DNA of 64,000 nucleotides, taken from positions 25,296,001 to 25,360,000 of the forward strand of contig CM075985.1 of assembly GCA_038087875.1 (NCBI GenBank). Direction: 5' to 3'. The notes under the pieces are model-generated. The model was not told where the DNA came from. It saw nothing but the letters and a program-made list of their open reading frames with translations, and did no database searches. How positions within the stretch are numbered: position 1 is the stretch's first letter; each line of letters begins with the position of its first letter. Shown here piece after piece: positions 140 to 63,853 of this stretch. Source of the stretch: Malacoraja senta. Lineage: Eukaryota. Both the position numbers and the translations under genes were made by a program.

Positions 140-181
140 CTGATGTAATGCTGGTGATGGTCTCTGTTGTTGGTGTCGTTT
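140..181 (-). CDS. Micro-exon type A, 42 nt, consensus ETTPTTETTTSITS (this copy ETTPTTETITSITS)
   Basis: Minus strand ttttttttcactag|AAACGACA...ACATCAG|gttagt. 18 copies starting (+ coordinate) at 140, 3866, 7601, 11327, 17491, 21215, 24925, 29519, 33247, 36960, 40655, 42969, 46682, 50377, 52691, 56404, 60117, 63812. Confidence 0.88.
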
Positions 182-3100
182 CTAGTGAAAAAAAAGAATG
201 CTGTATTCAAGTGGGGCAGCCAAGAGGAATTGGTACGCAGTTATAAAGCCATCAACAGGAATTCATGAGCTGGCATATTTTATGAAAACGTTTTACTAGT
301 TGTCACTTTCTTCATCAGTCAATAAAGCATGCGGCCATAAAATATGGCGGAATTGATTTTTCCTCGTCTTTGAGAAATTGCAGGTGATCAGGCATTTAGT
401 AAGATTGAGTTGGCACAGATGTGCAGCTGGTAGAGCTGCAGCCTCATAGTGTTAGAGATTTGTATTCTATCCTGACCTCGGTTGCTGTCTATGCTGGGAT
501 TGCACGTTGTCCTTTTCACTGCCTGTGATGCCCCAAGTTTTTAACAGAGGAATATACTGACCTGATGTTGTGGTGGTCCCAGATGTTGATGTAGTTGTTT
601 CTAGTGAAATAAAAAAAATGTTATGTTCCACTGAGACAAACAAGAGGAATTGTTATGCAGTTTAGAATCCTTCAACAGGAATTTATCAACTGGCACCTTT
701 TAATAAAACATTTTACACTCGATATTTCCTTATCAGTGAATAAAGCGTGCGGCCATACAATGCGGCTGCATTACTTTTTCCTTGTCAATCAGCAGCTGAA
801 TATTTCAGGGCCATCACAAACAATTTCAATTTCTTAATGTACCAACTTCAGATTTTGTGGAAGCTCAGCAAGTATTCCAAGAACTACTGATCAGAAATTT
901 AGAACATAAGGAGCGGTAAAGTGCCACAGCTGGTGCAACTCCTACCTCACAGCACCAGAGACTTCAGATTGATTTGTTCCATGGGTGTTGTGTGCATGGA
1001 GATTACATATACTCCCTGTTATGTGTGCCTTTCCTACAAGTGTCAGAAATATATTGTCACTAACCTGATGTAGTACTGGTAGTGGTCTCAGTTGATGATG
1101 TAGTTGTTGGTGTTTCTAGTGAAAGAAAATAATGCAATATTCAACCAAGACAGCCAAGAGGAATTGGTATACAGCTAACTATTGGTAGTCAGGAAACCAT
1201 CAGCAGGAATTCATATGCTGGCACACTTTATTAAAATGTTTAACAGATGGCATTTTTGTTCTTCATAAAATAAAATTGTAGGGCAAAACATACTTTTGAT
1301 CAATCAGCAGCTGTCTATTTCTGTGCCATCACAAATAATCCTAAGCTATCTATACACCAGTTCCGGATTTCCTGGAAGATCAACCGTCTTCCAAAGACCG
1401 CAAGGTCTACTTAATACCATAATTTCTAATAGTATGGAATGTGTGTACTATGGGTAAGCATGTCTGTTCATATGTCCCATTGATACACGATTCTCAACTT
1501 GCATAAAATGTGTTCATATTAATCATGGTTTTGTTTTTTGCTATGGAATGTCCGAAGAAATAGAGAAGCAGAAAACACCAACACATATCCTCCACAAATC
1601 TGAACTATTTTGAAATTGTGTCATAATTTGGTACAATTGTTATGAGCCAAACATTGACATCTTAACGTGTATATTTTCACAATTTATGCCAATAATGTGA
1701 GCAAAGATGCAAGAAGTAAGTCACAGAGCTGATGTTAGAAATGTTGTTTCATTGTCTTTGATTTGCCAATGTTTATGGAAAGTGGTTTGACTCACCTGTT
1801 GTGGAACTGGAGGTGGACTCAGTTGTACCAGTTGTCAAATATGTTGTTGGTGTTGTTCCTTGAGAGCAAATAGAAAAGCATTTACAAATTGAATTGCAAG
1901 AGTCACCAATCAATTTCAGTACGATACTGCACATTTTCCTGAGACTGGGCTGAATTTTAACAATGTTCATTGTTCGTGCCTAAGCAAAGGACATTTAGAA
2001 GTTAACCAAATTTTGCTTCGTCATTTATCAAGGACCGAAATTATGAAAAGACATTGTGATTTTTCAAAGAAAGTTCTGAACTCCTTTATTGATCCATTTT
2101 GGAAAAATCATTGAGCAGAAATAAAACTGTTTAACAGCGTTGCCATGACCAAAAACTCCCGGAATAGTGGAAGAGGCGAAGGGAAGAGACCTTTTCTATA
2201 AAAGTGAAAATCCTTATCCATGTCAACTGAAAAGTGCCAGCCTCAATGCTCTTTTTAAAATTATTTAGGCAACCAGCACCAAAAGGCCACCTTAATATGG
2301 TAGAGGCTTCTATATTTTCGTGGTGAGAAACTACATTTTTTGAATAAAGGAATGAACAAATATTCCTGAAGAGGGTGCTGTGTAGAACTTCACGAAACAA
2401 AGCACAGTCCTAAAGGAAAAGCTAACAAGATTGATAGATGATGTTACTAACCTGATGTAGTGCTGGTGGTGGTCTCAGTTGTTGGTGTCGTTTCTAGTGA
2501 AAGAAAGAATGCTGTATTCAAGTGGAGCAGCCAAGAGGAATTGGTACACGGTTATAAAGCCATCAACAGCAATTCATGAGCTGGCACATTTTATGAAAGT
2601 GTTTTAATATGTAGATTGGTTACTTCTTAAGAATATATGCAAAGATAAACTGCTCAGCAACAACAGACTGTGTCCCCCGCGGCCTCTCCACGGCGTTCAG
2701 CGCCCAGCTCGCCTATTTCACCACCTCAACTCGGTGGGTCTCCGGTGATGGCCCCGGTCACTTCCCCGGTCACTTCCTCGTCATTTCACCAGTGAATTGA
2801 ATAAAGCATGCGGCCATACTATACGGCTGCATTACTTTTTCCTTGTCAATCAGCAGCTGAATATTTCAGGGCCATCATAAACAATTTCAATTTCTTAATG
2901 TACCAACTTCAGATTTTGTGGAAGCTCAGCAAGTATTCTAAGAACTACTGATCAGAAATTTAGAACATAAGGAGCGGTAAAGTGCCACAGCTAGTGCAAC
3001 TCCAACCTCACAGCACCAGAGAATTCAGATTGATTTGTTCCACAGGTGTTGTGTGCATGGAGATTACATGTATTCCTGTTGTGTGTGCCTTTCCTACAAG

Positions 3101-9100: not shown

Positions 9101-12100
9101 TTATGAGCCAAACATTGACATCTTAACGTGTATATTTGCACAATTTATGCCAATAACGTAAGCAAAGATGCAAGAAGTAAGTCACAGAGCTGATGTTAGA
9201 AATGTTGTTTCATTGTCTTTGATTTGCCAATGTTTATGGAAAGTGGTTTGACTCACCTGTTGTGGAACTGGAGGTGGACTCAGTTGTACCAGTTGTCAAA
9301 GATGTTGTTGGTGTTGTTCCTTGAGAGCAAATAGAAAAGCATTTACAAATTGAATTGCAAGAGTCACCAATCAATTTCAGTACGATACTGCACATTTTCC
9401 TGAGACTGGGCTGAATTTTAACAATGTTCATTGTTCGTGCCTAAGCAAAGGACATTTAGAAGTTCACCAAATTTTGCTTCGTCATTTATCAAGGACCGAA
9501 ATTATGAAAAGACATTGTGATTTTTCAAAGAAAGTTCAGAACTCCTTTATTGATCCATTTTGGAAAAATCATTGAGCAGAAACAAAACTGTTTAACAGCG
9601 TTGCCATGACCAAAAACTCCCGGAATAGTGGAAGAGGCAAAGGGAAGAGACCTTTTCTATAAAAGTGAAAATCCTTATCCATGTCAACTGAAAAGTGCCA
9701 GCCTCAATGCTCTTTTTAAAATTATTTAGGCAACCTGCACCAAAACGCCACTTTAATATGGTAGAGGCTTCTATATTTTCGTGGTGAGAAACTACATTTT
9801 TTGAATAAAGGAATGAACAAATATTCCTGAAGAGGGTGCTGTGTAGAACTTCACTAAACAAAGCACAGTCCTAAAGGAAAAGCTAACAAGATTGATAGAT
9901 GATGTTACTAACCTGATGTAGTGCTGGTGGTGGTCTCAGTTGTTGGTGTCGTTTCTAGTGAAAGAAAGAATGCTGTATTCAAGTGGAGCAGCCAAGAGGA
10001 ATTGGTACACAGTTATAAAGCCATGAACAGCAATTCATGAGCTGGCACATTTTATGAAAGTGTTTTAATATGTAGATTGGTTATTTCTTAATAATATATG
10101 CAAAGATAAACTGCTCAGCAACAACAGACTGTGTCCCCCGCGGCCTCTCCACGGCGTTCAGCGCCCAGCTCGCCTATTTCACCACCTCAACTCGGTGGGT
10201 CTCCGGTGATGGCCCCGGTCACTTCCCCGGTCACTTCCCCATCATTTCACCAGTGAATTGAATAAAGCATGCGGCCATACTATACGGCTGCATTACTTTT
10301 TCCTTGTCAATCAGCAGCTGAATATTTCAGGGCCATCATAAACAATTTCAATTTCTTAATGTACCAACTTCAGATTTTGTGGAAGCTCAGAAAGTATTCT
10401 AAGAACTACTGATCAGAAATTTAGAACATAAGGAGCGGTAAAGTGCCACAGCTGGTGCAACTCCTACCTCACAGCACCAGAGAATTCAGATTGATTTGTT
10501 CCACAGGTGTTGTGTGCATGGAGATTACATGTACTCCTGTTGTGTGTGCCTTTCCTACAAGTGTCTGAAATATATTGTCACTAACCTGATGTAGTACTGG
10601 TTGTGGTCTCAGTTGTTGATGTAGTTGTTGGTGTTTCTACTGAAAGAAAATAATGCAATATTGAACCAAGGCAGCCAAGAGGAATTGGTATACACCTAAC
10701 TATTGGTAGTCAGGAAACCATCAGCAGGAATTCATATGCTGGCACACTTTATTAAAATGTTTAACAGATGGCATTTTTGTTCTTCGTAGAATAAAATGGC
10801 AGGCCAAATTATATCTGATCAATCAGCAGCTGAATATTTCTGTGCCATCACAAATAAACCTGTTCTCTCTATATACCAGTTGCAGATTTCCTGGAAGATC
10901 AACCGTCTTCCAAATACCGCAAGGTCTACTTAATACCATATTTTCTAATACCATTATTCGTTGATTCATTTTTGAAAAATCTTTGAGCTGAAACAAAACT
11001 GTTTAACAGCGTTGCCATGACCAAAAACTCCCGGAATAGTGGAAGAGGCGAAGGGAAGAGACCTTTTCTATAAAAGTGAAAATCCTTATCCATATCTACT
11101 GTAAGGTGCCAGACTCAATTCACTTTTTAAATTATTATTGCAGGCAATCAGCACCAAAAGGCCTCCTTAATTCGGTAGTTGTTTCTATATTTTCTTGGTG
11201 AGAAACCACATTTTTGGAATAAAGCAATGAACAAATATTCCTGAAGAGGGTGCTATATAGAGCTTCACTAAACAAAGCACAGTCCTAAAGGAAAAGCTAA
11301 CAAGATTGATAGATGATGTTACTAACCTGATGTAATGCTGGTGGTGGTCTCTGTTGTTGGTGTCGTTTCTAGTGAAAAAAAAGAATGCTGTATTCAAGTG
11401 GGGCAGCCAAGAGGAATTGGTACGCAGTTATAAAGCCATCAACAGGAAATTCATGAGCTGGCATATTTTATGAAAACGTTTTACTAGTTGTCACTTTCTT
11501 CATCAGTCAATAAAGCATGCGGCCATACTATATGGCTGCATTGATTTTTCCTCGTCTTTCAGAAATTGCAGGCGATCAGGCATTTAGTAAGATTGAGTTG
11601 GCACAGATGTGCAGCTGGTAGAGCTGCAGCCTCATAGTGTTAGAGATTTGTATTCTATCCTGACCTCGGTTGCTGTCTATGCTGGGATTGCACGTTCTCC
11701 TTTTCACTGCCTGTGATCCCCCAAGTTTTTAACAGAGGATGATACTGACCTGATGTTGTGGTGGTCCCAGATGTTGATGTAGTTGTTTCTAGTGAAATAC
11801 AAACAAATGTTATGTTCCACTGAGACAAACAAGAGGAATTGTTATGCAGTTTAGAATCCTTCAACAGGAATTTATCAACTGGCACCTTTTAATAAAACAT
11901 TTTACACTTGATATTTCCTTATCAGTGAATAAAGCGTGCGGCCATACAATGCGGCTGCATTACTTTTTCCTTGTCAATCAGCAGCTGAATATGTCAGGGC
12001 CATCACAAACAATTTCAATTTCTTAATGTACCAACTTCAGATTTTGTGGAAGCTCAGCAAGTATTCCAAGAACTACTGATCAGGAATTTATAACATAAGG

Positions 12101-51100: not shown

Positions 51101-54100
51101 TCAGCAAGTATTACAAGAACTACTGATCAGAAATTTAGAACATAAGGAGCGGTAAAGTGCCACAGCTGGTGCAACTCCTACCTCACAGCACCAGAGACTT
51201 CAGATTGATTTGTTCCATGGGTGTTGTGTGCATGGAGATTACATGTACTCCCTGTTATGTGTGCCTTTCCTACAAGTGTCAGAAATATATTGTCACTAAC
51301 CTGATGTAGTACTGGTAGTGGTCTCAGTTGATGATGTAGTTGTTGGTGTTTCTAGTGAAAGAAAATAATGCAATATTCAACCAAGACAGCCAAGAGGAAT
51401 TGGTATACAGCTAACTATTGGTAGTCAGGAAACCATCAGCAGGAATTCATATGCTGGCACACTTTATTAAAATGTTTAACAGATGGTATTTTTGTTCTTC
51501 ATAGAATAAAATTGTAGGGCAAAACATACTTTTGATCAATCAGCAGCTGAATATTTCTGTGCGATCACAAATAATCTTGTGCTATCTATACACCAGTTGC
51601 GGATTTCCTGGAAGATCAACCGTCTTCCAAAGACCGCAAGGTCTACTTAATACCTTAATTTCTAATAGTATGGAATGTGTGTACTATGGGTAAGCATGTC
51701 TGTTCATATGTCCCATTGATACATGATTCTCAACTTGCATAAAATGTGTTCATATTAATCATGGTTTTGTTTTTTGCTACGGAATGTCTGAAGAAATAGA
51801 GAAGCAGAAAACACCAACACATATCCTCCACAAATCTGAACTATTTTGAAATTGTGTCATAATTTGGTACAATTGTTATGAGCCAAACATTGTCATCTTA
51901 ACGTGTATATTTGCACAATTTATGCCAATAATGTAAGCAAAGATGCAAGAAGTAAGTCACAGAGCTGATGTTAGAAATGTTGTTTCATTGTCTTTGATTT
52001 GCCAATGTTTATGGAAAGTGGTTTGACTCACCTGTTGTGGAACTGGAGGTGGACTCAGTTGTACCAGTTGTCAAAGATGTTGTTGGTGTTGATCCTTGAG
52101 AGCAAATAGAAAAGCATTTACAAATTGAATTGCAAGAGTCACCAATCAATTTCAGTACGATACTGCACATTTTCCTGAGACTGGGCTGAATTTTAACAAT
52201 GTTCATTGTTCGTGCCTAAGCAAAGGACATTTAGAAGTTAACCAAATTTTGCTTCGTCATTTATCAAGGACCGAAATTATGAAAAGACATTGTGATTTTT
52301 CAAAGAAAGTTCTGAACTCCTTTATTGATCCATTTTTGAAAAATCTTTGAGCTGAAACAAAACTGTTTAACAGCGTTGCCATGACCAAAAACTCCCGGAA
52401 TAGTGGAAGAGGCGAAGGGAAGAGACCTTTTCTATAAAAGTGAAAATCCTTATCCATGTCTACTGAAAGGTGCCAGACTCAATTCACTTTTTAAATTATT
52501 ATTGCAGGCAATCAGCACCAAAAGGCCTCCTTAATTCGGTAGTTGTTTCTATATTTTCTTGGTGAGAAACTACATTTTTGGAATAAAGCAATGAACAAAT
52601 ATTCCTGAAGAGGGTGCTGTGTAGAACTTCACTAAACAAAGCACAGTCCTAAAGGAAAAGCTAACAAGATTGATAGATGATGTTACTAACCTGATGTAGT
52701 GCTGGTGGTGGTCTCAGTTGTTGGTGTCGTTTCTAGTGAAAAAAAAGAATGCTGTATTCAAGTGGGGCAGCCAAGAGGAATTGGTACGCAGTTATAAAGC
52801 CATCAACAGGAATTCATGAGCTGGCAAATTTTATGAAAACGTTTTACTAGTTGTCACTTTCTTCATCAGTCAATAAAGCATGCGGCCATACTATATGGCT
52901 GCATTGATTTTTCCTCGTCTTTCAGAAATTGCAGCTGATCAGGCATTTAGTAAGATTTAGTTGGCACAGATGTGCAGCTGGTAGAGCTGCAGCCTCATAG
53001 TGTTAGAGATTTGTATTCTATCCTGACCTCGGTTGCTGTCTATGCTGGGATTGCACGTTCTCCTTTTCACTGCCTGTGATCCCCCAAGTTTTTAACAGAG
53101 GATGATACTGACCTGATGTTGTGGTGGTCCCAGATGTTGATGTAGTTGTTTCTAGTGAAATAAAAAAATGTTATGTTCCACTGAGACAAACAAGAGGAAT
53201 TGTTATGCAGTTTAGAATCCTTCAACAGGAATTTATCAACTGGCACCTTTTAATAAAACATTTTACACATGATATTTCCTTATCAGTGAATAAAGCATGC
53301 GGCCATACAATGCGGCTGCATTACTTTTTCCTTGTCAATCAGCAGCTGAATATGTCAGGGCCATCACAAACAATTTCAATTTCTTAATGTACCAACTTCA
53401 GATTTTGTGGAAGCTCAGCAAGTATTCCAAGAACTACTGAACAGAAATTTAGAACATAAGGAGCGGTAAAGTGCCACAGCTGGTGCAACTCCTACCTCAC
53501 AGCACCAGAGACTTCAGATTGATTTGTTCCATGGGTGTTGTGTGCATGGAGATTACATGTACTCCCTGTTATGTGTGCCTTTCCTACAAGTGTCAGAAAT
53601 ATATTGTCACTAACCTGATGTAGTACTGGTAGTGGTCTCAGTTGTTGATGTAGTTGTTGGTGTTTCTAGTGAAAGAAAATAATGCAATATTCAACCAAGA
53701 CAGCCAAGAGGAATTGGTATAGAGCTAATTATTGGTAGTCAGGAAACCATCAGCAGGAATTCATATGCTGGCACACATTATTAAAATGTTTAACAGATGG
53801 CATTTTTGTTCTTCATAGAATAAAATTGTAGGGCAAAACATACTTTTGATCAATCAGCAGCTGAATATTTCTGTGCCATCACAAATAATCCTGAGCTATC
53901 TATATACCAGTTGCGGATTTCCTGGAAGATCAACCGTCTTCCAAAGACCGCAAGGTCTACTTAATACCATAATTTCTAATAGTATGGAATGTGTGTACTA
54001 TGGGTAAGCATGTCTGTTCATATGTCCCATTGATACATGATTCTCAACTTGCATAAAATGTGTTCATATTAATCATGGTTTTGTTTTTTGCTACGGAATG

Positions 54101-57100
54101 TCCGAAGAAATAGAGAAGCAGAAAACACCAACACATATCCTCCACAAATCTGAACTGTTTTGAAATTGTGTCATAATTTGGTACAATTGTTATGAGCCAA
54201 ACATTGACATCTTAACGTGTATATTTGCACAATTTATGCCAATAATGTGAGCAAAGATGCAAGAAGTAAGTCACAGAGCTGATGTTAGAAATGTTGTTTC
54301 ATTGTCTTTGATTTGCCAATGTTTATGGAAAGTGGTTTCACTCACCTGTTGTGGAACTGGAGGTAGACTCAGTTGTACCAGTTGTCAAAGATGTTGTTGG
54401 TGTTGTTCCTAAAGAGCAAATAGAAAAGCATTTACAAATTGAATTGCAAGAGTCACCAATCAATTTCAGTACGATACTGCACATTTTCCTGAGACTGGGC
54501 TGAATTTTAACAATGTTCATTGTTCGTGCCTAAGCAAAGGACATTTAGAAGTTAACCATATTTTGCTTCGTCATTGATCAAGGACCGAAATTATGAAAAG
54601 ACATTGTGATTCTTCAAAGAAAGTTCTGAACTCCTTTATTGATCTATTTTGGAAAAATCATTGAGCAGAAACAAAACTGTTTAACAGCGTTGCCATGACC
54701 AAAAACTCCCGGAATAGTGGAAGAGGCGAAGGGAAGAGACCTTTTCTATAAAAGTGAAAATCCTTATCCATGTCAACTGAAAAGTGCCAGCCTCTATGCT
54801 CTTTTTAAAATTATTTAGGCAACCAGCACCAAAAGGCCACCTTAATATGGTAGAGGCTTCTATATTTCCGTGGTGAGAAACTACATTTTTTGAATAAAGG
54901 AATGAACAAATATTCCTGAAGAGGGTGCTGTGTAGAACTTCACTAAACAAAGCACAGTCCTAAAGGAAAAGCTAACAAGATTGATAGATAATGTTACTAA
55001 CCTGATGTGGTGCTGGTGGTGGTCTCAGTTGTTGGTGTCGTTTCTAGTGAAAGAAAGAATGCTGTATTCAAGTGGAGCAGCCAAGAGGAATTGGTACACA
55101 GTTATAAAGCCATCAACAGCAATTCATGAGCTGGCACATTTTATGAAAGTGTTTTAATATGTAGACTGGTTACTTCTTAATAATATATGCAAAGATAAAC
55201 TGCTCAGCAACAACAGACTGTGTCCCCCGCGGCCTCTCCACGGCGTTCAGCGCCCAGCTCGCCTATTTCACCACCTCAACTCGGTGGGTCTCCGGTGATG
55301 GCCCCGGTCACTTCCCCGTCATTTCACCAGTGAATTGAATAAAGCATGCGGCCATACTATACGGCTGCATTACTTTTTCCTTGTCAATCAGCAGCTGAAT
55401 ATTTCAGGGCCATCATAAACAATTTCAATTTTTTAATGTACCAACTTCAGATTTTGTGGAAGCTCAGCAAGTATTCTAAGAACTACTGATCAGAAATTTA
55501 GAACATAAGGAGCGGTAAAGTGCCACAGCTGGTGCAACTCCTACCTCGCAGCACCAGAGAATTCAGATTGATTTGTTCCACAGGTGTTGTGTGCATGGAG
55601 GTTACATGTACTCCTGTTGTGTGTGCCTTTCCTACAAGTGTCTGAAATATATTGTCACTAACCTGATGTAGTACTGGTTGTGGTCTCAGTTGTTGATGTA
55701 GTTGTTGGTGTTTCTACTGAAAGAAAATAATGCAATATTCAACCAAGGCAGCCAAGAGAAATTGGTATACACCTAACTATTGGTAGTCAGGAAACCATCA
55801 GCAGGAATTCATATGCTGGCACACTTTATTAAAATGTTTAACAGATGGCATTTTTGTTCTTCGTAGAATAAAATGGCAGGCCAAATTATATCTGATCAAT
55901 CAGCAGCTGAATATTTCTGTGCCATCACAAATAAACCTGTTCTCTCTATATACCAGTTGCAGATTTCCTGGAAGATCAACCGTCTTCCAAATACTGCAAG
56001 GTCTACTTAATACCATATTTTCTAATACCATTATTCGTTGATCCATTTTTGAAAAATCTTTGAGCTGAAACAAAACTGTTTAACAGCGTTGCCATGACCA
56101 AAAACTCCCGGAATAGTGGAAGAGGCGAAGGGAAGAGACCTTTTCTATAAAAGTGAAAATCCTTATCCATGTCTACTGAAAGGTGCCAGACTCAATTCAC
56201 TTTTTAAATTATTATTGCAGGCAATCAGCACCAAAAGGCCTCCTTAATTCGGTAGTTGTTTCTATATTTTCTTGGTGAGAAACTACATTTTTGGAATAAA
56301 GCAATGAACAAATATTCCTGAAGAGGGTGCTGTGTAGAACTTCACTAAACAAAGCACAGTCCTAAAGGAAAAGCTAACAAGATTGATAGATGATGTTACT
56401 AACCTGATGTAGTGCTGGTGGTGGTCTCAGTTGTTGGTGTCGTTTCTAGTGAAAAAAAAGAATGCTGTATTCAAGTGGGGCAGCCAAGAGGAATTGGTAC
56501 GCAGTTATAAAGCCATCAACAGGAATTCATGAGCTGGCATATTTTATGAAAACGTTTTACTAGTTGTCACTTTCTTCATCAGTCAATAAAGCATGCGGCC
56601 ATACTATATGGCTGCATTGATTTTTCCTCGTCTTTCAGAAATTGCAGCTGATCAGGCCTTTAGTAAGATTTAGTTGGCACAGATGTGCAGCTGGTAGAGC
56701 TGCAGCCTCATAGTGTTAGAGATTTGTATTCTATCCTGACCTCGGTTGCTGTCTATGCTGGGATTGCACGTTCTCCTTTTCACTGCCTGTGATCCCCCAA
56801 GTTTTTAACAGAGGATGATACTGACCTGATGTTGTGGTGGTCCCAGATGTTGATGTAGTTGTTTCTAGTGAAATAAAAAAATGTTATGTTCCACTGAGAC
56901 AAACAAGAGGAATTGTTATGCAGTTTAGAATCCTTCAACAGGAATTTATCAACTGGCACCTTTTAATAAAACATTTTACACATGATATTTCCTTATCAGT
57001 GAATAAAGCATGCGGCCATACAATGCGGCTGCATTACTTTTTCCTTGTCAATCAGCAGCTGAATATGTCAGGGCCATCACAAACAATTTCAATTTCTTAA

Positions 57101-60100
57101 TGTACCAACTTCAGATTTTGTGGAAGCTCAGCAAGTATTCCAAGAACTACTGAACAGAAATTTAGAACATAAGGAGCGGTAAAGTGCCACAGCTGGTGCA
57201 ACTCCTACCTCACAGCACCAGAGACTTCAGATTGATTTGTTCCATGGGTGTTGTGTGCATGGAGATTACATGTACTCCCTGTTATGTGTGCCTTTCCTAC
57301 AAGTGTCAGAAATATATTGTCACTAACCTGATGTAGTACTGGTAGTGGTCTCAGTTGTTGATGTAGTTGTTGGTGTTTCTAGTGAAAGAAAATAATGCAA
57401 TATTCAACCAAGACAGCCAAGAGGAATTGGTATACAGCTAATTATTGGTAGTCAGGAAACCATCAGCAGGAATTCATATGCTGGCACACATTATTAAAAT
57501 GTTTAACAGATGGCATTTTTGTTCTTCATAGAATAAAATTGTAGGGCAAAACATACTTTTGATCAATCAGCAGCTGAATATTTCTGTGCCATCACAAATA
57601 ATCCTGAGCTATCTATATACCAGTTGCGGATTTCCTGGAAGATCAACCGTCTTCCAAAGACCGCAAGGTCTACTTAATACCATAATTTCTAATAGTATGG
57701 AATGTGTGTACTATGGGTAAGCATGTCTGTTCATATGTCCCATTGATACATGATTCTCAACTTGCATAAAATGTGTTCATATTAATCATGGTTTTGTTTT
57801 TTGCTACGGAATGTCCGAAGAAATAGAGAAGCAGAAAACACCAACACATATCCTCCACAAATCTGAACTATTTTGAAATTGTGTCATGATTTGGTACAAT
57901 TGTTATGAGCCAAACATTGACATCTTAACGTGTATATTTGCACAATTTATGCCAATAATGTGAGCAAAGATGCAAGAAGTAAGTCACAGAGCTGATGTTA
58001 GAAATGTTGTTTCATTGTCTTTGATTTGCCAATGTTTATGGAAAGTGGTTTCACTCACCTGTTGTGGAACTGGAGGTGGACTCAGTTGTACCAGTTGTCA
58101 AAGATGTTGTTGGTGTTGTTCCTAAAGAGCAAATAGAAAAGCATTTACAAATTGAATTGCAAGAGTCACCAATCAATTTCAGTACGATACTGCACATTTT
58201 CCTGAGACTGGGCTGAATTTTAACAATGTTCATTGTTCGTGCCTAAGCAAAGGACATTTAGAAGTTAACCATATTTTGCTTCGTCATTGATCAAGGACCG
58301 AAATTATGAAAAGACATTGTGATTCTTCAAAGAAAGTTCTGAACTCCTTTATTGATCTATTTTGGAAAAATCATTGAGCAGAAACAAAACTGTTTAACAG
58401 CGTTGCCATGACCAAAAACTCCCGGAATAGTGGAAGAGGCGAAGGGAAGAGACCTTTTCTATAAAAGTGAAAATCCTTATCCATGTCAACTGAAAAGTGC
58501 CAGCCTCTATGCTCTTTTTAAAATTATTTAGGCAACCAGCACCAAAAGGCCACCTTAATATGGTAGAGGCTTCTATATTTTCGTGGTGAGAAACTACATT
58601 TTTTGAATAAAGGAATGAACAAATATTCCTGAAGAGGGTGCTGTGTAGAACTTCACTAAACAAAGCACAGTCCTAAAGGAAAAGCTAACAAGATTGATAG
58701 ATAATGTTACTAACCTGATGTGGTGCTGGTGGTGGTCTCAGTTGTTGGTGTCGTTTCTAGTGAAAGAAAGAATGCTGTATTCAAGTGGAGCAGCCAAGAG
58801 GAATTGGTACACAGTTATAAAGCCATCAACAGCAATTCATGAGCTGGCACATTTTATGAAAGTGTTTTAATATGTAGACTGGTTACTTCTTAATAATATA
58901 TGCAAAGATAAACTGCTCAGCAACAACAGACTGTGTCCCCCGCGGCCTCTCCACGGCGTTCAGCGCCCAGCTCGCCTATTTCACCACCTCAACTCGGTGG
59001 GTCTCCGGTGATGGCCCCGGTCACTTCCCCGTCATTTCACCAGTGAATTGAATAAAGCATGCGGCCATACTATACGGCTGCATTACTTTTTCCTTGTCAA
59101 TCAGCAGCTGAATATTTCAGGGCCATCATAAACAATTTCAATTTTTTAATGTACCAACTTCAGATTTTGTGGAAGCTCAGCAAGTATTCTAAGAACTACT
59201 GATCAGAAATTTAGAACATAAGGAGCGGTAAAGTGCCACAGCTGGTGCAACTCCTACCTCGCACCACCAGAGAATTCAGATTGATTTGTTCCACAGGTGT
59301 TGTGTGCATGGAGGTTACATGTACTCCTGTTGTGTGTGCCTTTCCTACAAGTGTCTGAAATATATTGTCACTAACCTGATGTAGTACTGGTTGTGGTCTC
59401 AGTTGTTGATGTAGTTGTTGGTGTTTCTACTGAAAGAAAATAATGCAATATTCAACCAAGGCAGCCAAGAGAAATTGGTATACACCTAACTATTGGTAGT
59501 CAGGAAACCATCAGCAGGAATTCATATGCTGGCACACTTTATTAAAATGTTTAACAGATGGCATTTTTGTTCTTCGTAGAATAAAATGGCAGGCCAAATT
59601 ATATCTGATCAATCAGCAGCTGAATATTTCTGTGCCATCACAAATAAACCTGTTCTCTCTATATACCAGTTGCAGATTTCCTGGAAGATCAACCGTCTTC
59701 CAAATACTGCAAGGTCTACTTAATACCATATTTTCTAATACCATTATTCGTTGATCCATTTTTGAAAAATCTTTGAGCTGAAACAAAACTGTTTAACAGC
59801 GTTGCCATGACCAAAAACTCCCGGAATAGTGGAAGAGGCGAAGGGAAGAGACCTTTTCTATAAAAGTGAAAATCCTGATCCATGTCTACTGAAAGGTGCC
59901 AGACTCAATTCACTTTTTAAATTATTATTGCAGGCAATCAGCACCAAAAGGCCTCCTTAATTCGGTAGTTGTTTCTATATTTTCTTGGTGAGAAACTACA
60001 TTTTTGGAATAAAGCAATGAACAAATATTCCTGAAGAGGGTGCTATATAGAGCTTCACTAAACAAAGCACAGTCCTAAAGGAAAAGCTAACAAGATTGAT

Positions 60101-63100
60101 AGATGATGTTACTAACCTGATGTAGTGCTGGTGGTGGTCTCTGTTGTTGGTGTTGTTTCTAGTGAAAGAAAAGATTGCTGTATTGAAGTGGGGCAGCCAA
60201 TAGGAATTGGTACACAGTTATAAAGCCATCAACAGGAATTCATGAGCTGGCATATTTTATGAAAACGTTTTACTAGTTGTCACTTTCTTCATCAGTCAAT
60301 AAAGCATGCGGCCATACTATATGGCTGCATTGATTTTTCCTCGTCTTTCAGAAATTGCAGGCGATCAGGCATTTAGTAAGATTGAGTTGGCACAGATGTG
60401 CAGCTGGTAGAGCTGCAGCCTCATAGTGTTAGAGATTTGTATTCTATCCTGACCTCGGTTGCTGTCTATGCTGGGATTGCACGTTCTCCTTTTCACTGCC
60501 TGTGATCCCCCAAGTTTTTAACAGAGGATGATACTGACCTGATGTTGTGGTGGTCCCAGATGTTGATGTAGTTGTTTCTAGTGAAATAAAAAAATGTTAT
60601 GTTCCACTGAGACAAACAAGAGGAATTGTTATGCAGTTTAGAATCCTTCAACAGGAATTTATCAACTGGCACCTTTTAATAAAACATTTTACACTTGATA
60701 TTTCCTTATCAGTGAATAAAGCGTGCGGCCATACAATGCTGCTGCATTACTTTTTCCTTGTCAATCAGCAGCTGAATATGTCAGGGCCATCACAAACAAT
60801 TTCAATTTCTTAATGTACCAACTTCAGATTTTGTGGAAGCTCAGCAAGTATTCCAAGAACTACTGATCAGAAATTTAGAACATAAGGAGTGGTAAAGTGC
60901 CACAGCTGGTGCAACTCCTACCTCACAGCACCAGAGACTTCAGATTGATTTGTTCCATGGGTGTTGTGTGCATGGAGATTACATGTACTCCCTGTTATGT
61001 GTGCCTTTCCTACAAGTGTCAGAAATATATTGTCACTAACCTGATGTAGTACTGGTAGTGGTCTCAGTTGATGATGTAGTTGTTGGTGTTTCTAGTGAAA
61101 GAAAATAATGCAATATTTAACCAAGACAGCCAAGAGGAATTGGTATACAGCTAACTATTGGTAGTCAGGAAACCATCAGTAGGAATTCAGGTGCTGGCAC
61201 ACTTTATTAAAATGTTTAACAGATGGCATTTTTCTTCTTCATAGAATAAAATTGTAGGGCAAAACATACATTTGATCAATCAGCAGCTGAATATTTCTGT
61301 GCCATCACAAATAATCCTGTGCTATCTATACACCAGTTGCGGATTTCCTGGAAGATCAACCGTCTTCCAAAGACCGCAAGGTCTACTTAATACCATAATT
61401 TCTAATAGTATGCAATGTGTGTACTATGGGTAAGCACGTCTGTTCATATGTCCCATCGATACATGATTCTCAACTTGCATAAAATGTGTTCAAATTAATC
61501 ATGGTTTTGTTTTATGCTACGGAATGTCCGAAGAAATAGAGAAGCAGAAAACACCAACACATATCCTCCACAAATCTGAACTATTTTGAAATTGTGTCAT
61601 AATTTGGTACAATTGTTATGAGCCAAACATTGACATCTTAACGTGTATATTTGCACAATTTATGCCAATAATGTAAGCAAAGATGCAAGAAGTAAGTCAC
61701 AGAGCTGATGTTAGAAATGTTGTTTCATTGTCTTTGATTTGCCAATGTTTATGGAAAGTGGTTTGACTCACCTGTTGTGGAACTGGAGGTGGACTCAGTT
61801 GTACCAGTTGTCAAAGATGTTGTTGGTGTTGTTCCTTGAGAGCAAATAGAAAAGCATTTACAAATTGAATTGCAAGAGTCACCAATCAATTTCAGTACGA
61901 TACTGCACATTTTCCTGAGACTGGGCTGAATTTTAACAATGTTCATTGTTTGTGCCTAAGCAAAGGACATTTAGAAGTTAACCAAATTTTGCTTCGTCAT
62001 TTATCAAGGACCGAAATTATGAAAAGACATTGTGATTTTTCAAAGAAAGTTCTGAACTCCTTTATTGATCCATTTTGGAAAAATCATTGAGCACAAACAA
62101 AACTGTTTAACAGCGTTGCCATGACCAAAAACTCCCGAAATAGTGGAAGAGGCGAAGGGAAGAGACCTTTTCTATAAAAGTGCCAGCCTCTATGCTATTT
62201 TTAAAATTATTTAGGCAACCAGCACCAAAAGGCCACCTTAATATGGTAGAGGCTTCTATATTTTCGTGGTGAGAAACTACATTTTTTGAATAAAGGAATG
62301 AACAAATATTCCTGAAGAGGGTGCTGTGTAGACCTTCACTAAACAAAGCACAGTCCTAAAGGAAAAGCTAACAAGATTGATAGATGATGTTACTAACCTG
62401 ATGTAGTGCTGGTGGTGGTCTCAGTTGTTGGTGTCGTTTCTAGTGAAAGAAAGAATGCTGTATTCAAGTGGAGCAGCCAAGAGGAATTGGTACACGGTTA
62501 TAAAGCCATCAACAGCAATTCATGAGCTGGCACATTTAATGAAAGTGTTTTAATATGTAGATTGGTTACTTCTTAATAATATATGCAAAGATAAACTGCT
62601 CAGCAACAACAGACTGTGTCCCCCGCGGCCTCTCCACGGCGTTCAGCGCCCAGCTCGCCTATTTCACCACCTCAACTCGGTGGGTCTCCGGTGATGGCCC
62701 CGGTCACTTCCCCGGTCACTTCCCTGTCATTTCACCAGTGAATTGAATAAAGCATGCGGCCATACTATACGGCTGCATTACTTTTTCCTTGTCAATCAGC
62801 AGCTGAATATTTCAGGGCCATCATAAACAATTTCAATTTCTTAATGTACCAACTTCAGATTTTGTGGAAGCTCAGCAAGTATTCTAAGAACTACTGATCA
62901 GAAATTTAGAACATAAGGAGCGGTAAAGTGCCACAGCTGGTGCAACTCCTACCTCACAGCACCAGAGAATTCAGATTGATTTGTTCCACAGGTGTTGTGT
63001 GCATGGAGATTACATGTACTCCTGTTGTGTGTGCCTTTCCTACAAGTGTCTGAAATATATTGTCACTAACCTGATGTAGTACTGGTTGTGGTCTCAGTTG

Positions 63101-63853
63101 TTGATGTAGTTGTTGGTGTTTCTACTGAAAGAAAATAATGCAATATTCAACCAAGGCAGCCAAGAGGAATTGGTATACACCTAACAATTGGTAGTCAGGA
63201 AAACATCAGCAGGAATTCATATGCTGGCACACTTTATTAAAATGTTTAACAGATGGCATTTTTGTTCTTCGTAGAATAAAATGGCAGGCCAAATTATATC
63301 TGATCAATCAGCAGCTGAATATTTCTGTGCCATCACAAATAAACCTGTTCTCTCTATATACCAGTTGCAGATTTCCTGGAAGATCAACCGTCTTCCAAAT
63401 ACCGCAAGGTCTACTTAATACCATATTTTCTAATACCATTATTCGTTGATCCATTTTTGAAAAATCTTTGAGCTGAAACAAAACTGTTTAACAGCGTTGC
63501 CATGACCAAAAACTCCCGGAATAGTGGAAGAGGCGAAGGGAAGAGACCTTTTCTATAAAAGTGAAAATCCTTATCCATATCTACTGTAAGGTGCCAGACT
63601 CAATTCACTTTTTAAATTATTATTGCAGGCAATCAGCACCAAAAGGCCTCCTTAATTCGGTAGTTGTTTCTATATTTTCTTGGTGAGAAACTACATTTTT
63701 GGAATAAAGCAATGAACAAATATTCCTGAAGAGGGTGCTATATAGAGCTTCACTAAACAAAGCACAGTCCTAAAGGAAAAGCTAACAAGATTGATAGATG
63801 ATGTTACTAACCTGATGTAATGCTGGTGGTGGTCTCTGTTGTTGGTGTCGTTT
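140..63853 (-). CDS. Internal part of a multi-exon mucin-like (Thr/Ser-rich PTS domain) gene; 104 phase-1 micro-exons, ~5,010 nt, ~1,670 aa in this window; both ends outside the window
   Basis: Every exon has canonical AG/GT ends on the minus strand, a length divisible by 3, and ends in G so that junction codons are GAA or GGA (GAC once). I saw no stop codon or indel in any exon copy, while introns carry many indels. Composition of the 96-aa unit: T57 S19 E10 P5 G3 L1 I1. Confidence 0.9.
410..520 (+). mobile_element. Degenerate tRNA-derived SINE 5' relic (HE1-like), repeated in every A-B intron
   Basis: tggcacagatgtgcagctggtagagctgcagcctcatagtgttagaga...tatcctgacctcggttgctgtctatg...ttgcacgttctcc resembles the A-box/B-box head of shark/ray SINEs; recognised from memory, not aligned. 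Confidence 0.65.
562..600 (-). CDS. Micro-exon type B, 39 nt, ETTTSTSGTTTTS
   Basis: Minus strand tttttttatttcactag|AAACAACT...ACATCAG|gtcagt. 18 copies at 562, 4288, 8024, 11750, 14218, 17913, 21637, 25347, 29942, 33669, 37382, 41077, 43391, 47104, 50799, 53113, 56826, 60539. Confidence 0.88.
911..1035 (+). mobile_element. Second degenerate tRNA-derived SINE relic (HE1-like), in every B-C intron, with a paralogous copy in every E-F intron (e.g. 2972-3095)
   Basis: gagcggtaaagtgccacagctggtgcaactcctacctcacagcaccagagacttcagattgat...gggtgttgtgtgcatggagattacatgtactccctgt resembles the same SINE head; heavily CpG-decayed. Confidence 0.6.
1065..1115 (-). CDS. Micro-exon type C, 51 nt, ETPTTTSSTETTTSTTS
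   Basis: Minus strand ttttctttcactag|AAACACCA...ACATCAG|gttagt. 18 copies at 1065, 4790, 8526, 12254, 14720, 18414, 22124, 25850, 30444, 34171, 37884, 41579, 43893, 47606, 51301, 53615, 57328, 61041. Confidence 0.88.
1796..1858 (-). CDS. Micro-exon type D, 63 nt, consensus GTTPTTSLTTGTTESTSSSTT (this copy has Y for the first S)
   Basis: Minus strand ttttctatttgctctcaag|GAACAACA...ACAACAG|gtgagt; the peptide is visible inside the 65-aa ORFs. Copies at 1796, 5521, 9257, 12985, 15451, 19145, 22855, 26581, 31175, 34902, 38615, 42310, 44624, 48337, 52032, 54346, 58059, 61772, plus a divergent copy at 28858. Confidence 0.9.
2452..2493 (-). CDS. Micro-exon type E (paralog of A), 42 nt, ETTPTTETTTSTTS
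   Basis: Minus strand ttctttctttcactag|AAACGACA...ACATCAG|gttagt. 16 copies at 2452, 6177, 9913, 13641, 16077, 19801, 23511, 27237, 31831, 35558, 39241, 45280, 48963, 55002, 58715, 62398. Confidence 0.88.
2610..2795. other. Insert with a GC/CpG-rich core in the E-F intron, containing a 12-bp mini-repeat (CCCCGGTCACTT x1-2)
   Basis: Replaces about 25 bp of the paralogous A-B intron. Two 12-mer copies in most units; one copy at ~13940, 35860, 45580, 55300, 59015. Confidence 0.75.
3125..3175 (-). CDS. Micro-exon type F (paralog of C), 51 nt (54 nt if the upstream CAG is used), ETPTTTSTTETTTSTTS
   Basis: Minus strand ttttctttcagtag|AAACACCA...ACATCAG|gttagt. 15 copies at 3125, 6857, 10586, 16750, 20474, 24184, 27910, 32503, 36219, 39914, 45941, 49636, 55663, 59376, 63071. 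Confidence 0.86.
28213..28454 (-). mobile_element. 5'-truncated CR1-clade LINE (elasmobranch HER1-like) 3' end, intronic, single copy
   Basis: Absent from all other units at the site gcag-atttc-ctggaag. Flanked by ATTTC direct repeats (28208-28212 and 28455-28459). Minus strand encodes FTQGVVKLWNSLPQKLDEASSLAIFKRELDVALVAKGIRGYGEKAGTGY*, resembling the CR1 ORF2 C-terminus, and ends in a TTTCTATG-type 8-mer tail. Confidence 0.9.
28858..28920 (-). CDS. Divergent micro-exon D', 63 nt, GTTPTTYLINGTTESTTSSTT
   Basis: Minus strand tttctatttgctcttcag|GAACAACA...ACAACAG|gtgagt; same length and phase as D; single copy in the window. Confidence 0.85.
32900..58040. repeat. Higher-order repeat, period 9,722 bp (3713+3695+2314), about 2.6 copies
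   Basis: Exact 9,722-bp offsets: ORFs 33677/43399/53121, 37390/47112/56834 and 41085/50807, with shared diagnostic variants. Confidence 0.95.

What the first reader, a model, noticed from the sequence alone, without database searches (positions are those of the whole stretch)
140..63853. Hidden giant micro-exon mucin-like gene: a 'macrosatellite' that is 104 symmetric phase-1 coding exons
Seen in sequence: six exon types per unit with AG/GT ends, lengths divisible by 3, the same phase, and a joined frame of about 79% Thr+Ser with regularly spaced Glu and no Cys. Established: the PTS domains of MUC2, MUC5AC and MUC5B lie mainly in one huge exon, whereas multi-exon PTS coding is known for MUC19-type and frog integumentary (FIM) mucins. 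Inference: this is the O-glycosylated domain of a very large elasmobranch mucin or mucin-like protein, grown by amplifying exon+intron blocks. ORF finders miss it, and repeat masking and short-read annotation are likely to miss it too.
Basis: partly seen in the sequence, partly recalled or inferred. Interest (0 to 1): 0.92.

Follow-up and report, generated by a model that had tools for sequence, protein, structure and literature searches.

The report
Skate mucin core built from micro-exons
This 64-kb repeat in a skate genome looks like the sugar-carrying middle of a giant mucus protein gene, encoded by 104 tiny in-frame exons instead of one huge exon; the layout is rare but has precedent, and expression was not shown.

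Summary
The window is a macrosatellite with a unit of about 3.7 kb. Its minus strand carries 104 short blocks of six types (39, 42, 42, 51/54, 51 and 63 nt). Every block has an AG acceptor and a GT donor, a length divisible by 3, and phase 1.

Joined, the blocks give 1,685 residues with no stop: Thr 59%, Ser 19%, Glu 10%, Pro 5%, no Cys. The other two frames have dozens of stops.

All 103 strong donor sites on the minus strand sit at block ends. The plus strand has none.

The six types are old paralogues. Upstream introns are only 72-77% identical, yet all types keep the splice signals, and every in-exon length difference is a multiple of 3.

The best reading is a real multi-exon PTS (mucin) domain, grown by duplication of exon-plus-intron blocks. 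Confidence is about 0.75.

Not shown: transcription, splicing, or the flanking domains. Protein searches found nothing, and I think HMMER cannot see this composition. Recent copies show no extra constraint on exons.

The scan noted this same array on the overlapping neighbour windows and similar arrays elsewhere on this chromosome. Untested first-stage notes place a D3 assembly upstream and a VWC plus cystine knot downstream.

Multi-exon PTS coding is already published for chicken and zebrafish Muc13, so this is a new variant of a known kind.

The parts
140..63853 (-). Whole array inside the window: 104 phase-1 micro-exons (5,055 nt, 7.9% of the window) separated by introns of 380-690 nt. It runs off both window ends.
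   Evidence: The full coordinate list by exon type is in notebook entry 3.
56446..60158 (-). One canonical 3,713-nt unit: A-B-C-D-E-F plus the F-to-A intron. It encodes 97 aa (96 if exon B uses its inner acceptor).
60117..60158 (-). Exon type A, 42 nt, peptide ETTPTTETTTS(T/I)TS. Acceptor cactAG, donor CAG|GTTAGT.
59376..59429 (-). Exon type B, 54 nt (VETPTTTSTTETTTSTTS). It has a tandem CAG/TAG acceptor, so it would be 51 nt if the inner TAG is used.
58715..58756 (-). Exon type C, 42 nt, peptide ETTPTTETTTSTTS. It is a younger paralogue of A: 92% identity over 525 nt, flanks included.
58059..58121 (-). Exon type D, 63 nt, peptide GTTPTTSLTTGTTESTSSSTT. Donor CAG|GTGAGT matches the consensus at 9 of 9 positions.
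57328..57378 (-). Exon type E, 51 nt, peptide ETPTTTS(S/T)TETTTSTTS. It is a younger paralogue of B: 94% identity over 695 nt.
56826..56864 (-). Exon type F, 39 nt, peptide ETTTSTSGTTTTS. Donor CAG|GTCAGT.
50419..52732 (-). Short four-exon unit A-D-E-F (2,314 nt). A second copy lies at 40697-43010 and is 0.0% different over its D-E-F part.
40697..50418 (-). One 9,722-nt higher-order repeat: two six-exon units plus one four-exon unit. Neighbouring copies differ by 0-0.4%, against 1.5-2.2% for other units.
24967..29560 (-). Aberrant unit A-D'-B-C-D-E-F. The A-D'-B part aligns to a canonical C-D-E at only 90.9% identity.
28858..28920 (-). Relic exon D' (63 nt, peptide GTTPTTYLINGTTESTTSSTT). Splice sites are intact, but four differences from D are all non-synonymous, and three of them remove a Thr or Ser.
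11369..13682 (-). Four-exon unit C-D-E-F, which lacks A and B.
27237..27278 (-). The only exon with a changed splice-signal base: a type C exon with donor CGG|GTTAGT instead of CAG|GTTAGT. The change is silent (TCA to TCG).
21215..21256 (-). The most altered type A exon (ETTPTTETIPSITS). Splice sites are intact. It is the 104th exon, missed by my first Thr/Ser filter.

Best explanation
The window lies wholly inside the central Thr/Ser-rich (PTS, mucin-type) region of one very large gene on the minus strand.

Shown by the sequence:
- There are 104 exons of 39-63 nt, of six types.
- Each has a pyrimidine-rich YAG acceptor and a CAG|GTNAGT donor.
- All are in phase 1, and the introns are 380-690 nt.
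- Joined in order they read through as 1,685 residues: 59% Thr, 19% Ser, 10% Glu, 5% Pro, no Cys, 170 acidic (Glu+Asp) against only about 3 basic residues.
- About 40% of the Glu (68 of 170) comes from the split junction codon G|AA. That spacing is therefore tied to the splice-site consensus itself.

Shown about the array's growth, which went in layers:
1. One ancestral exon-plus-upstream-intron block gave the lineages A, B, F and D.
2. A four-exon unit A-D-B-F duplicated, lost one D and one F, and became the six-exon unit of about 3.7 kb.
3. That unit amplified, and a 9.7-kb higher-order repeat arose most recently.

Inferred:
- The exons are spliced together and translated.
- The product is densely O-glycosylated, forming the extended, negatively charged bottle-brush part of a secreted mucin.
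- Because every exon is symmetric, unequal crossing-over or exon skipping changes the protein's length without breaking the frame.

From untested notes only: the gene is of the MUC19/FIM-B.1 type (D assemblies, then PTS, then VWC plus cystine knot).
For: Exon structure: 104 of 104 blocks keep AG and GT, a 3n length and phase 1. The joined frame has no stop, while the other two frames have 36 and 75 stops.

Splice sites: all 103 minus-strand donors matching at least 8 of 9 positions of MAG|GTRAGT are exon donors, and the plus strand has none in 64 kb. Across the 104 copies, the AG, the GT and donor positions +3 to +6 show 0 deviations from the type consensus in 832 site-copies. Neighbouring intron shows about 2%.

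Old paralogues A, B and F:
- Exon identity is 81-90%, upstream intron 72-77%, downstream intron about 50%.
- Splice signals are kept in all types, including the more distant D.
- In-exon gaps are 9, 3+6, 6+6 and 12 nt, all multiples of 3. Intron gaps are 2, 2 and 14 nt.

Recent copies: 13 indel events in introns, 9 of them not 3n, and none in exons.

Nothing else is coded here. The longest ORF is 89 aa, and there are no Pfam, Rfam or tRNA hits.

Precedent: chicken Muc13 has at least 12 exons, each encoding one 20-aa PTS repeat, with EST support; zebrafish Muc13 is similar. Little skate skin mucus carries mucin-type O-glycans.

Leads, not evidence: first-stage notes place a D3 assembly 39 kb beyond the window end (5' on the minus strand) and a VWC plus cystine knot 43 kb before its start (3').
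Against: No transcript or protein evidence. Three searches returned nothing:
- phmmer with the D-exon ORF against 1.84 billion representatives.
- A joined 65-aa C-D-E-F peptide against the 5.8-billion-protein set.
- An 89-aa intron ORF, used to look for related loci.
I expect the first two to be nearly blind, because HMMER corrects for biased composition and one tool also filters by length.

Among recent copies the exons are no less variable than the introns: 22 of 291 variable columns against 268 of 3,434. About 14 of the 22 exon variants change the amino acid, which is near the neutral expectation. Any constraint on the exact peptide is therefore weak.

Five of the six exon types have T or C at donor position +3, which is suboptimal.

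The copies are not independent, so the formal statistics are modest. My rough estimate is about 3.4 disabling changes expected in recent copies against 0 seen (P about 0.03), and (1/3)^4 for the four old 3n indels.

I could not read the flanking domain exons myself.
Confidence: 0.75

Rival explanations
1. The exons are real and spliced, but the gene is not a MUC19-type gel-forming mucin. It could be a membrane mucin (SEA/TM type, like Muc13) or another secreted Thr-rich glycoprotein.
For: Nothing in the window identifies the gene family. The only published multi-exon PTS precedent I could read is the membrane mucin Muc13. The tandem repeat of human MUC19 lies in one exon of about 12 kb.
Against: Untested first-stage notes describe a D3 assembly upstream and a VWC plus cystine knot downstream, on the matching sides for a minus-strand gene. 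Elephant shark is reported to have three Muc19 paralogues.
Confidence: 0.1
2. The array is structurally intact but silent or dying. It would be a recently amplified part of a mucin gene or pseudogene whose exons are no longer used, or mostly skipped, and too young to have decayed.
For: Units differ by only 0-2.2%. Exon and intron diversity are equal, and changes are near neutral. The relic D' exon has lost three Thr/Ser residues. No homologue or transcript was found.
Against: The much older paralogous types, with 23-28% intron divergence, still keep frame, phase, splice signals and Thr/Ser content. No stop, frameshift or lost AG/GT occurs in 104 exons.
Confidence: 0.1
3. It is a non-coding macrosatellite whose AC-rich blocks only look like exons. 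One chance arrangement would have been copied many times.
For: All six types descend from one ancestral block, so the number of independent observations is small. AC-rich triplet-like DNA favours 3n slippage.
Against: - Homology between the old types ends just after the donor consensus.
- The invariant positions are exactly AG, CAG|GT and +4 to +6, while +3 and the flanks vary.
- Only the Thr frame is open, and it is the frame that the phases maintain.
- Every strong donor in 64 kb sits at a block end.
Confidence: 0.04

Closest known systems
Chicken and zebrafish Muc13 multi-exon PTS domain (Lang, Hansson and Samuelsson 2006, PMC1552070)
   Same: The PTS domain is split into many small exons, each encoding one nearly identical Thr/Ser-rich repeat. 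Those authors already proposed that the layout may be ancestral and may allow length control by splicing.
   Different: Muc13 is a membrane mucin (SEA, TM) with at least 12 exons of one 20-aa type. Here there are 104 exons in the window alone, of six types and lengths (13-21 aa), arranged in a 3.7-kb six-exon super-unit with a 9.7-kb higher-order repeat. The gene is probably a secreted mucin. The chicken case has EST support and this one has none yet.
Human MUC19, and MUC2, MUC5AC, MUC5B and MUC6
   Same: Huge Thr/Ser-rich, Cys-poor, tandemly repeated central domains that vary in length by unequal recombination. If the neighbouring-window notes are right, this gene shares the MUC19 architecture.
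   Different: In the human genes the repeat lies in one very large exon: about 12 kb with a 30-bp unit in MUC19, and 'one big exon' for the others. Here the repeating unit is exon plus intron, and only 8% of the array is coding. Pro is low (5%) and Glu is high (10%).
Xenopus integumentary mucins FIM-B.1 and FIM-C.1
   Same: Skin mucins of a lower vertebrate with Thr-rich modular repeats. [quoted passage not shown] Frog Muc19 is expressed in skin. From my own memory, not checked here: FIM-B.1 repeats also contain Glu.
   Different: The gene structures of the FIMs were not available to me. No sequence similarity was tested or expected.
Cassette-exon repeat genes: tropoelastin and the titin PEVK region (from general knowledge, not checked here)
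   Same: Long runs of short, same-phase exons encode low-complexity repeats, so that skipping or duplicating any exon keeps the frame. Super-repeat blocks of several exons are duplicated together.
   Different: They are unrelated proteins with different composition and function. This is an analogy of gene architecture only.

Membership tests
Mucin PTS (Pro/Thr/Ser-rich tandem-repeat) domain | Very high Thr+Ser(+Pro) content, few or no Cys or aromatic residues | tested here: met
   Thr 58.6%, Ser 19.3%, Pro 5.2%, Cys 0 over 1,685 joined residues
Mucin PTS (Pro/Thr/Ser-rich tandem-repeat) domain | Tandem-repeat organisation | tested here: met
   A 97-aa repeat encoded by 3.7-kb units, about 18 units in the window
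Mucin PTS (Pro/Thr/Ser-rich tandem-repeat) domain | Dense O-GalNAc glycosylation of the product | not testable with these tools
   This needs protein chemistry. Skate skin mucus does contain core 1 and core 2 O-glycans, but they are not linked to this gene.
Mucin PTS (Pro/Thr/Ser-rich tandem-repeat) domain | Part of an expressed secreted or membrane protein (signal peptide, spliced mRNA) | tested here: inconclusive
   Searches for spliced products found nothing but were nearly blind. The window holds no terminal exons.
MUC19 / FIM-B.1-type gel-forming mucin | Three N-terminal VWD-C8-TIL assemblies (D1, D2, D'D3) | not testable with these tools
   This lies outside the window. An untested first-stage note reports a MUC19-type D3 39 kb beyond the window end.
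MUC19 / FIM-B.1-type gel-forming mucin | C-terminal VWC plus cystine knot, with no D4 assembly | not testable with these tools
   This lies outside the window. An untested first-stage note reports such a C-terminus 43 kb before the window start.
MUC19 / FIM-B.1-type gel-forming mucin | Conserved synteny of the MUC19 locus | not testable with these tools
   No flanking genes are visible from the window.
MUC19 / FIM-B.1-type gel-forming mucin | Central repeat in one large exon, as in human MUC19. This is a feature of the mammalian gene, not of the protein family. | tested here: not met
   Here the repeat is split into 39-63-nt exons, whereas human MUC19 has one exon of about 12 kb.
Multi-exon PTS organisation (Muc13 type of gene layout) | Each small exon encodes one PTS repeat, and the exons are mutually in frame | tested here: met
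   All 104 exons are 3n and phase 1-1, and each encodes one 13-21-aa Thr-rich repeat.
Multi-exon PTS organisation (Muc13 type of gene layout) | cDNA or EST proof of splicing | tested here: inconclusive
   No matching products were found. No transcript data can be reached with these tools.

The most novel reading that the evidence does not exclude
The micro-exon macrosatellite is the ancestral way of encoding MUC19-type mucin cores, and the skate uses it as a splicing cassette. Weak GTTAGT and GTCAGT donors, a tandem CAG/TAG acceptor and conserved intronic motifs would let tissues include different subsets of the more than 100 symmetric exons. That would tune mucin length and charge within one animal, something single-exon mammalian mucins can only vary between alleles.
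Probability: 0.2. Interest if true: 0.7.

Novelty: new variant of a known kind. Interest (0 to 1): 0.5.

Why it matters
Mucin cores are usually described as single giant exons whose length changes only by recombination between alleles. If this array is expressed, it shows the other solution at an extreme scale: more than 100 exons in 64 kb, with the array continuing beyond both window ends.

- **Length by two routes.** A mucin core made of symmetric micro-exons can change length by unequal crossing-over of exon-plus-intron blocks and, in principle, by exon skipping.
- **Annotation.** ORF finders, repeat masking and short-read assembly would all tend to hide such genes. Mucin inventories of cartilaginous fishes may therefore be incomplete.
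- **A dated example of growth.** The layered duplications give a clean record of how a repeat protein grows: one block, then a four-exon unit, then a six-exon unit, then a 9.7-kb higher-order repeat.
- **Splice sites shaping the protein.** The junction codon G|AA shows how splice-site consensus can fix a regularly spaced acidic residue in a protein.

Tried and rejected
**Searches that found nothing**
- phmmer with a 30-aa ORF covering exon D against 1.84 billion representatives: 0 hits.
- A joined 65-aa C-D-E-F peptide against the 5.8-billion-protein set, looking for spliced fragments of 36-114 aa. There were 4,538 word-sharing candidates, and none reached E <= 0.01. I think HMMER's correction for biased composition removes nearly all score from Thr-rich matches. 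The length filter also shuts out a giant annotated protein. These blanks therefore say little.
- An 89-aa intron ORF, used as a handle to fetch the same locus from other assemblies or species: only 1 candidate, not significant. No cross-species comparison was possible.
- I did not send a longer joined peptide. It would have had to be typed, the tool would still have been composition-blind, and the representative search accepts only the window's own contiguous sequence.

**Test for purifying selection among recent copies**
- Exon and intron have the same density of variable columns, 7.6% against 7.8%.
- A to C, B to E and D to D' exon divergence is only slightly below flank divergence. I tallied this by hand from the consensus exons and the and 56 alignments: about 5% against 8%, not significant.
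- I therefore dropped recent-copy diversity as evidence.

**Other features looked for**
- Rfam at gathering thresholds and a tRNA scan of the whole window found nothing.
- Pfam on the five longest or oddest ORFs found nothing.
- A plus-strand gene was rejected: the plus strand has no strong donor and no ORF above 88 aa.

**Paper not reached**
Zhu et al. 2011 on human MUC19 exon structure is not held in the library. My recollection that human MUC19 also has many small Ser/Thr-rich exons could not be checked and is not used.


Full report
**What is in the window**

The 64-kb window has no N and an even GC content of about 0.38. A 16-mer spacing histogram peaks at 3713, 3695 and 3726 nt, with lesser peaks at 2314 and 9722 nt. 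The whole window is therefore a macrosatellite with a unit of about 3.7 kb. Tandem Repeats Finder, limited to periods of 500 or less, reports only a small 12-nt minisatellite inside one intron.

**The exon-like blocks**

Translating the minus strand and looking for Thr/Ser-rich stretches gave short blocks that recur in a fixed order. Each block is bounded by AG and GT.

| Type | Copies | Length (nt) |
|---|---|---|
| A | 18 | 42 |
| B | 15 | 54 (51 with the inner acceptor) |
| C | 16 | 42 |
| D | 19 | 63 |
| E | 18 | 51 |
| F | 18 | 39 |

- The order is ABCDEF, with three A-D-E-F units, one C-D-E-F unit and one A-D'-B-C-D-E-F unit.
- Every block is a multiple of 3 and in phase 1.
- Acceptors are cactAG (69), tttcAG (15), ctcaAG (14), ctttAG (4) and two single variants, each behind a pyrimidine-rich tract.
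- Donors are CAG|GTTAGT (66), CAG|GTCAGT (18) and CAG|GTGAGT (19), plus one CGG|GTTAGT.
- Introns are 380-690 nt, and exons make up 7.9% of the DNA.

**The joined reading frame**

Spliced in order, the blocks give 1,685 residues with no stop codon: Thr 58.6%, Ser 19.3%, Glu 10.1%, Pro 5.2%, Gly 3.3%, no Cys. The 103-block version had 169 acidic against 3 basic residues, and the 104-block set has 170 Glu. In that earlier version the other two frames of the same joined sequence had 36 and 75 stops.

The junction codon is G|AA (Glu) 68 times, G|GA (Gly) 19 times, G|TA (Val) 15 times and G|AC once. So about 40% of the regularly spaced Glu residues are written across splice junctions. They are tied to the consensus G at the exon end and the A-rich exon start.

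**Is it more than copied chance?**

The copies are not independent, so I looked at three time depths.

*(a) Recent copies.* Units differ by 0-2.2%.
- Exons are no less variable than introns: 22 of 291 variable columns against 268 of 3,434.
- About 14 of the 22 exon variants change the amino acid, close to the neutral expectation.
- However, AG, GT and donor positions +3 to +6 show 0 deviations in 832 site-copies, and the last three exon bases show 1 in 312. Nearby intron shows about 2%.
- Introns have 13 indel events, 9 of them not multiples of 3, and exons have none.
- My rough tally is about 3.4 disabling events expected against 0 seen (P about 0.03).

*(b) Middle depth.* A resembles C at 92% and B resembles E at 94%, flanks included. 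The A-to-B intron equals the start of the C-to-D intron joined to the end of the D-to-E intron. The B-to-C intron equals the start of E-to-F joined to the end of F-to-A. The six-exon unit therefore arose from a duplicated four-exon unit A-D-B-F that lost one D and one F. One unit, at 24967-29560, still keeps the otherwise lost D'.

*(c) Deep.* All six types are homologous.
- For A, B and F, about 150-190 nt of upstream intron is homologous too, at 72-77% identity. D's upstream intron aligns only weakly, at about 45-48%.
- Exon identity is 81-90%.
- Downstream intron is unrelated beyond the donor consensus, at about 50% identity.
- Across these old lineages AG, CAG|GT and +4 to +6 are invariant, while +3 and the flanks vary.
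- In-exon length differences are 9, 3+6, 6+6 and 12 nt, all multiples of 3. Internal gaps in the aligned upstream intron (A, B, F) are 2, 2 and 14 nt.
- Thr/Ser content is kept in every lineage.

This long-term retention of frame, phase and splice signals is the strongest internal evidence that these are working exons.

**A whole-window control**

Scoring every GT against MAG|GTRAGT gives 103 sites with at least 8 of 9 matches on the minus strand. All 103 are the donors of catalogued exons. The plus strand has none.

Nothing else is encoded here:
- The longest ORF on either strand is 89 aa.
- Five intron ORFs have no Pfam match.
- There are no Rfam families or tRNAs.

**What I could not show**

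The window lies entirely inside the array, so I saw no signal peptide, VWD, cystine-knot, SEA or TM exons. I tried three ways to reach outside evidence:
- phmmer with a D-exon ORF.
- A joined 65-aa peptide, to catch spliced fragments.
- An intron ORF, to fetch related loci.

All returned nothing. I judge the first two nearly blind, because HMMER discounts biased composition and one tool restricts target length. The third shows only that the collection holds no matching ORF calls. Splicing and expression therefore remain inferred.

**Context from the scan (leads only, untested by me)**

The genome is a skate's. First-stage notes describe:
- The same micro-exon array on the two overlapping neighbour windows.
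- A 3.72-kb, 96-aa unit 35 kb before this window.
- A MUC19-type D3 assembly 39 kb beyond the window end.
- A VWC plus cystine knot without D4, 43 kb before the window start.
- Similar arrays 141-184 kb before and 215 kb beyond the window.

The D3 and cystine-knot positions fit a minus-strand gene of roughly 140-150 kb. None of these notes has a follow-up.

**Comparison with what is known**

- The 30-bp repeat of human MUC19 lies in a coding exon of about 12 kb, reported to lack introns in the longest isoform.
- The published precedent for the present layout is Muc13 of chicken, with at least 12 exons each encoding a 20-aa repeat and EST support, and of zebrafish. Its authors already suggested that the layout might be ancestral and might allow length control by splicing.
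- Frog FIM-C.1 is described as highly polymorphic through alternative splicing.
- Elephant shark has three Muc19 paralogues, and frog Muc19 is a skin mucin.
- Skate skin mucus carries mucin-type O-glycans.
- By analogy from general knowledge, tropoelastin and the titin PEVK region also use long runs of same-phase cassette exons.

**Verdict**

The structural interpretation, a multi-exon PTS domain grown by exon-plus-intron amplification, is well supported. The mucin identity and expression are plausible but unproven.

It is a new variant of a known kind. What is new is the scale, the six-type super-unit with a higher-order repeat, and probably the gel-forming context. What is not new is the principle. 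I give it an interest score of 0.5.

Noticed in passing
window 33289-60158 (minus strand): A 9.7-kb higher-order repeat: two six-exon units plus one four-exon unit. Equivalent units differ by 0-0.4%, and the two A-D-E-F units are identical over D-E-F. Other units differ by 1.5-2.2%. This points to very recent amplification, or possibly to an assembly effect.
   Followed up: partly
all 15 type B exons, e.g. window 59376-59429 (-): A tandem CAG|TAG acceptor of the NAGNAG type. The outer site adds a Val codon (54 nt) and the inner site gives 51 nt, as in the paralogous type E, which has only cacTAG.
   Followed up: partly
upstream introns of A, B and F types, e.g. window 60198-60209 and 60233-60240 (-): Two intronic motifs are invariant between the old paralogues: CAATTCCTCTTG at -51 to -40 and AATTCCTG at -82 to -75 from the acceptor. 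The surrounding intron is only about 74% identical. They may be splicing-control or branch-region elements.
   Followed up: partly
window 2640-2800 (+), and at least 10 further units (e.g. 6477-6523, 10213-10240, 62698-62724): A GC-rich insert of about 170 nt in the B-to-C intron, with no counterpart at the matching place in the paralogous F-to-A intron. It carries a 12-nt minisatellite, CCCCGGTCACTT, in 2-4 copies. Its origin is unknown, and it has no Pfam or Rfam match.
   Followed up: partly
window 410-520 (+), and the same place in every F-to-A intron: A degenerate stretch that looks to me like a tRNA-derived SINE of cartilaginous fishes (judged by eye and from memory). It caused the false 'SSTSCTSVPT' hits in my Thr/Ser scan. 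ARAGORN and Rfam do not call it.
   Followed up: no
window 27964-28857 (-), inside the relic unit: The D'-to-B intron holds a stretch of about 236 nt (roughly window 28218-28454) with no match in a canonical unit. A 76-aa plus-strand ORF there (28280-28510) has no Pfam hit. It may be an inserted element or an old intron sequence lost elsewhere.
   Followed up: partly
type A exons, e.g. 63812-63853 versus 60117-60158 (-): Type A exons carry a common Thr/Ile difference (ACT or ATT; 11 copies with Ile, 7 with Thr), and type E exons carry a Ser/Thr difference (11 against 6). These mark unit subfamilies along the array.
   Followed up: partly
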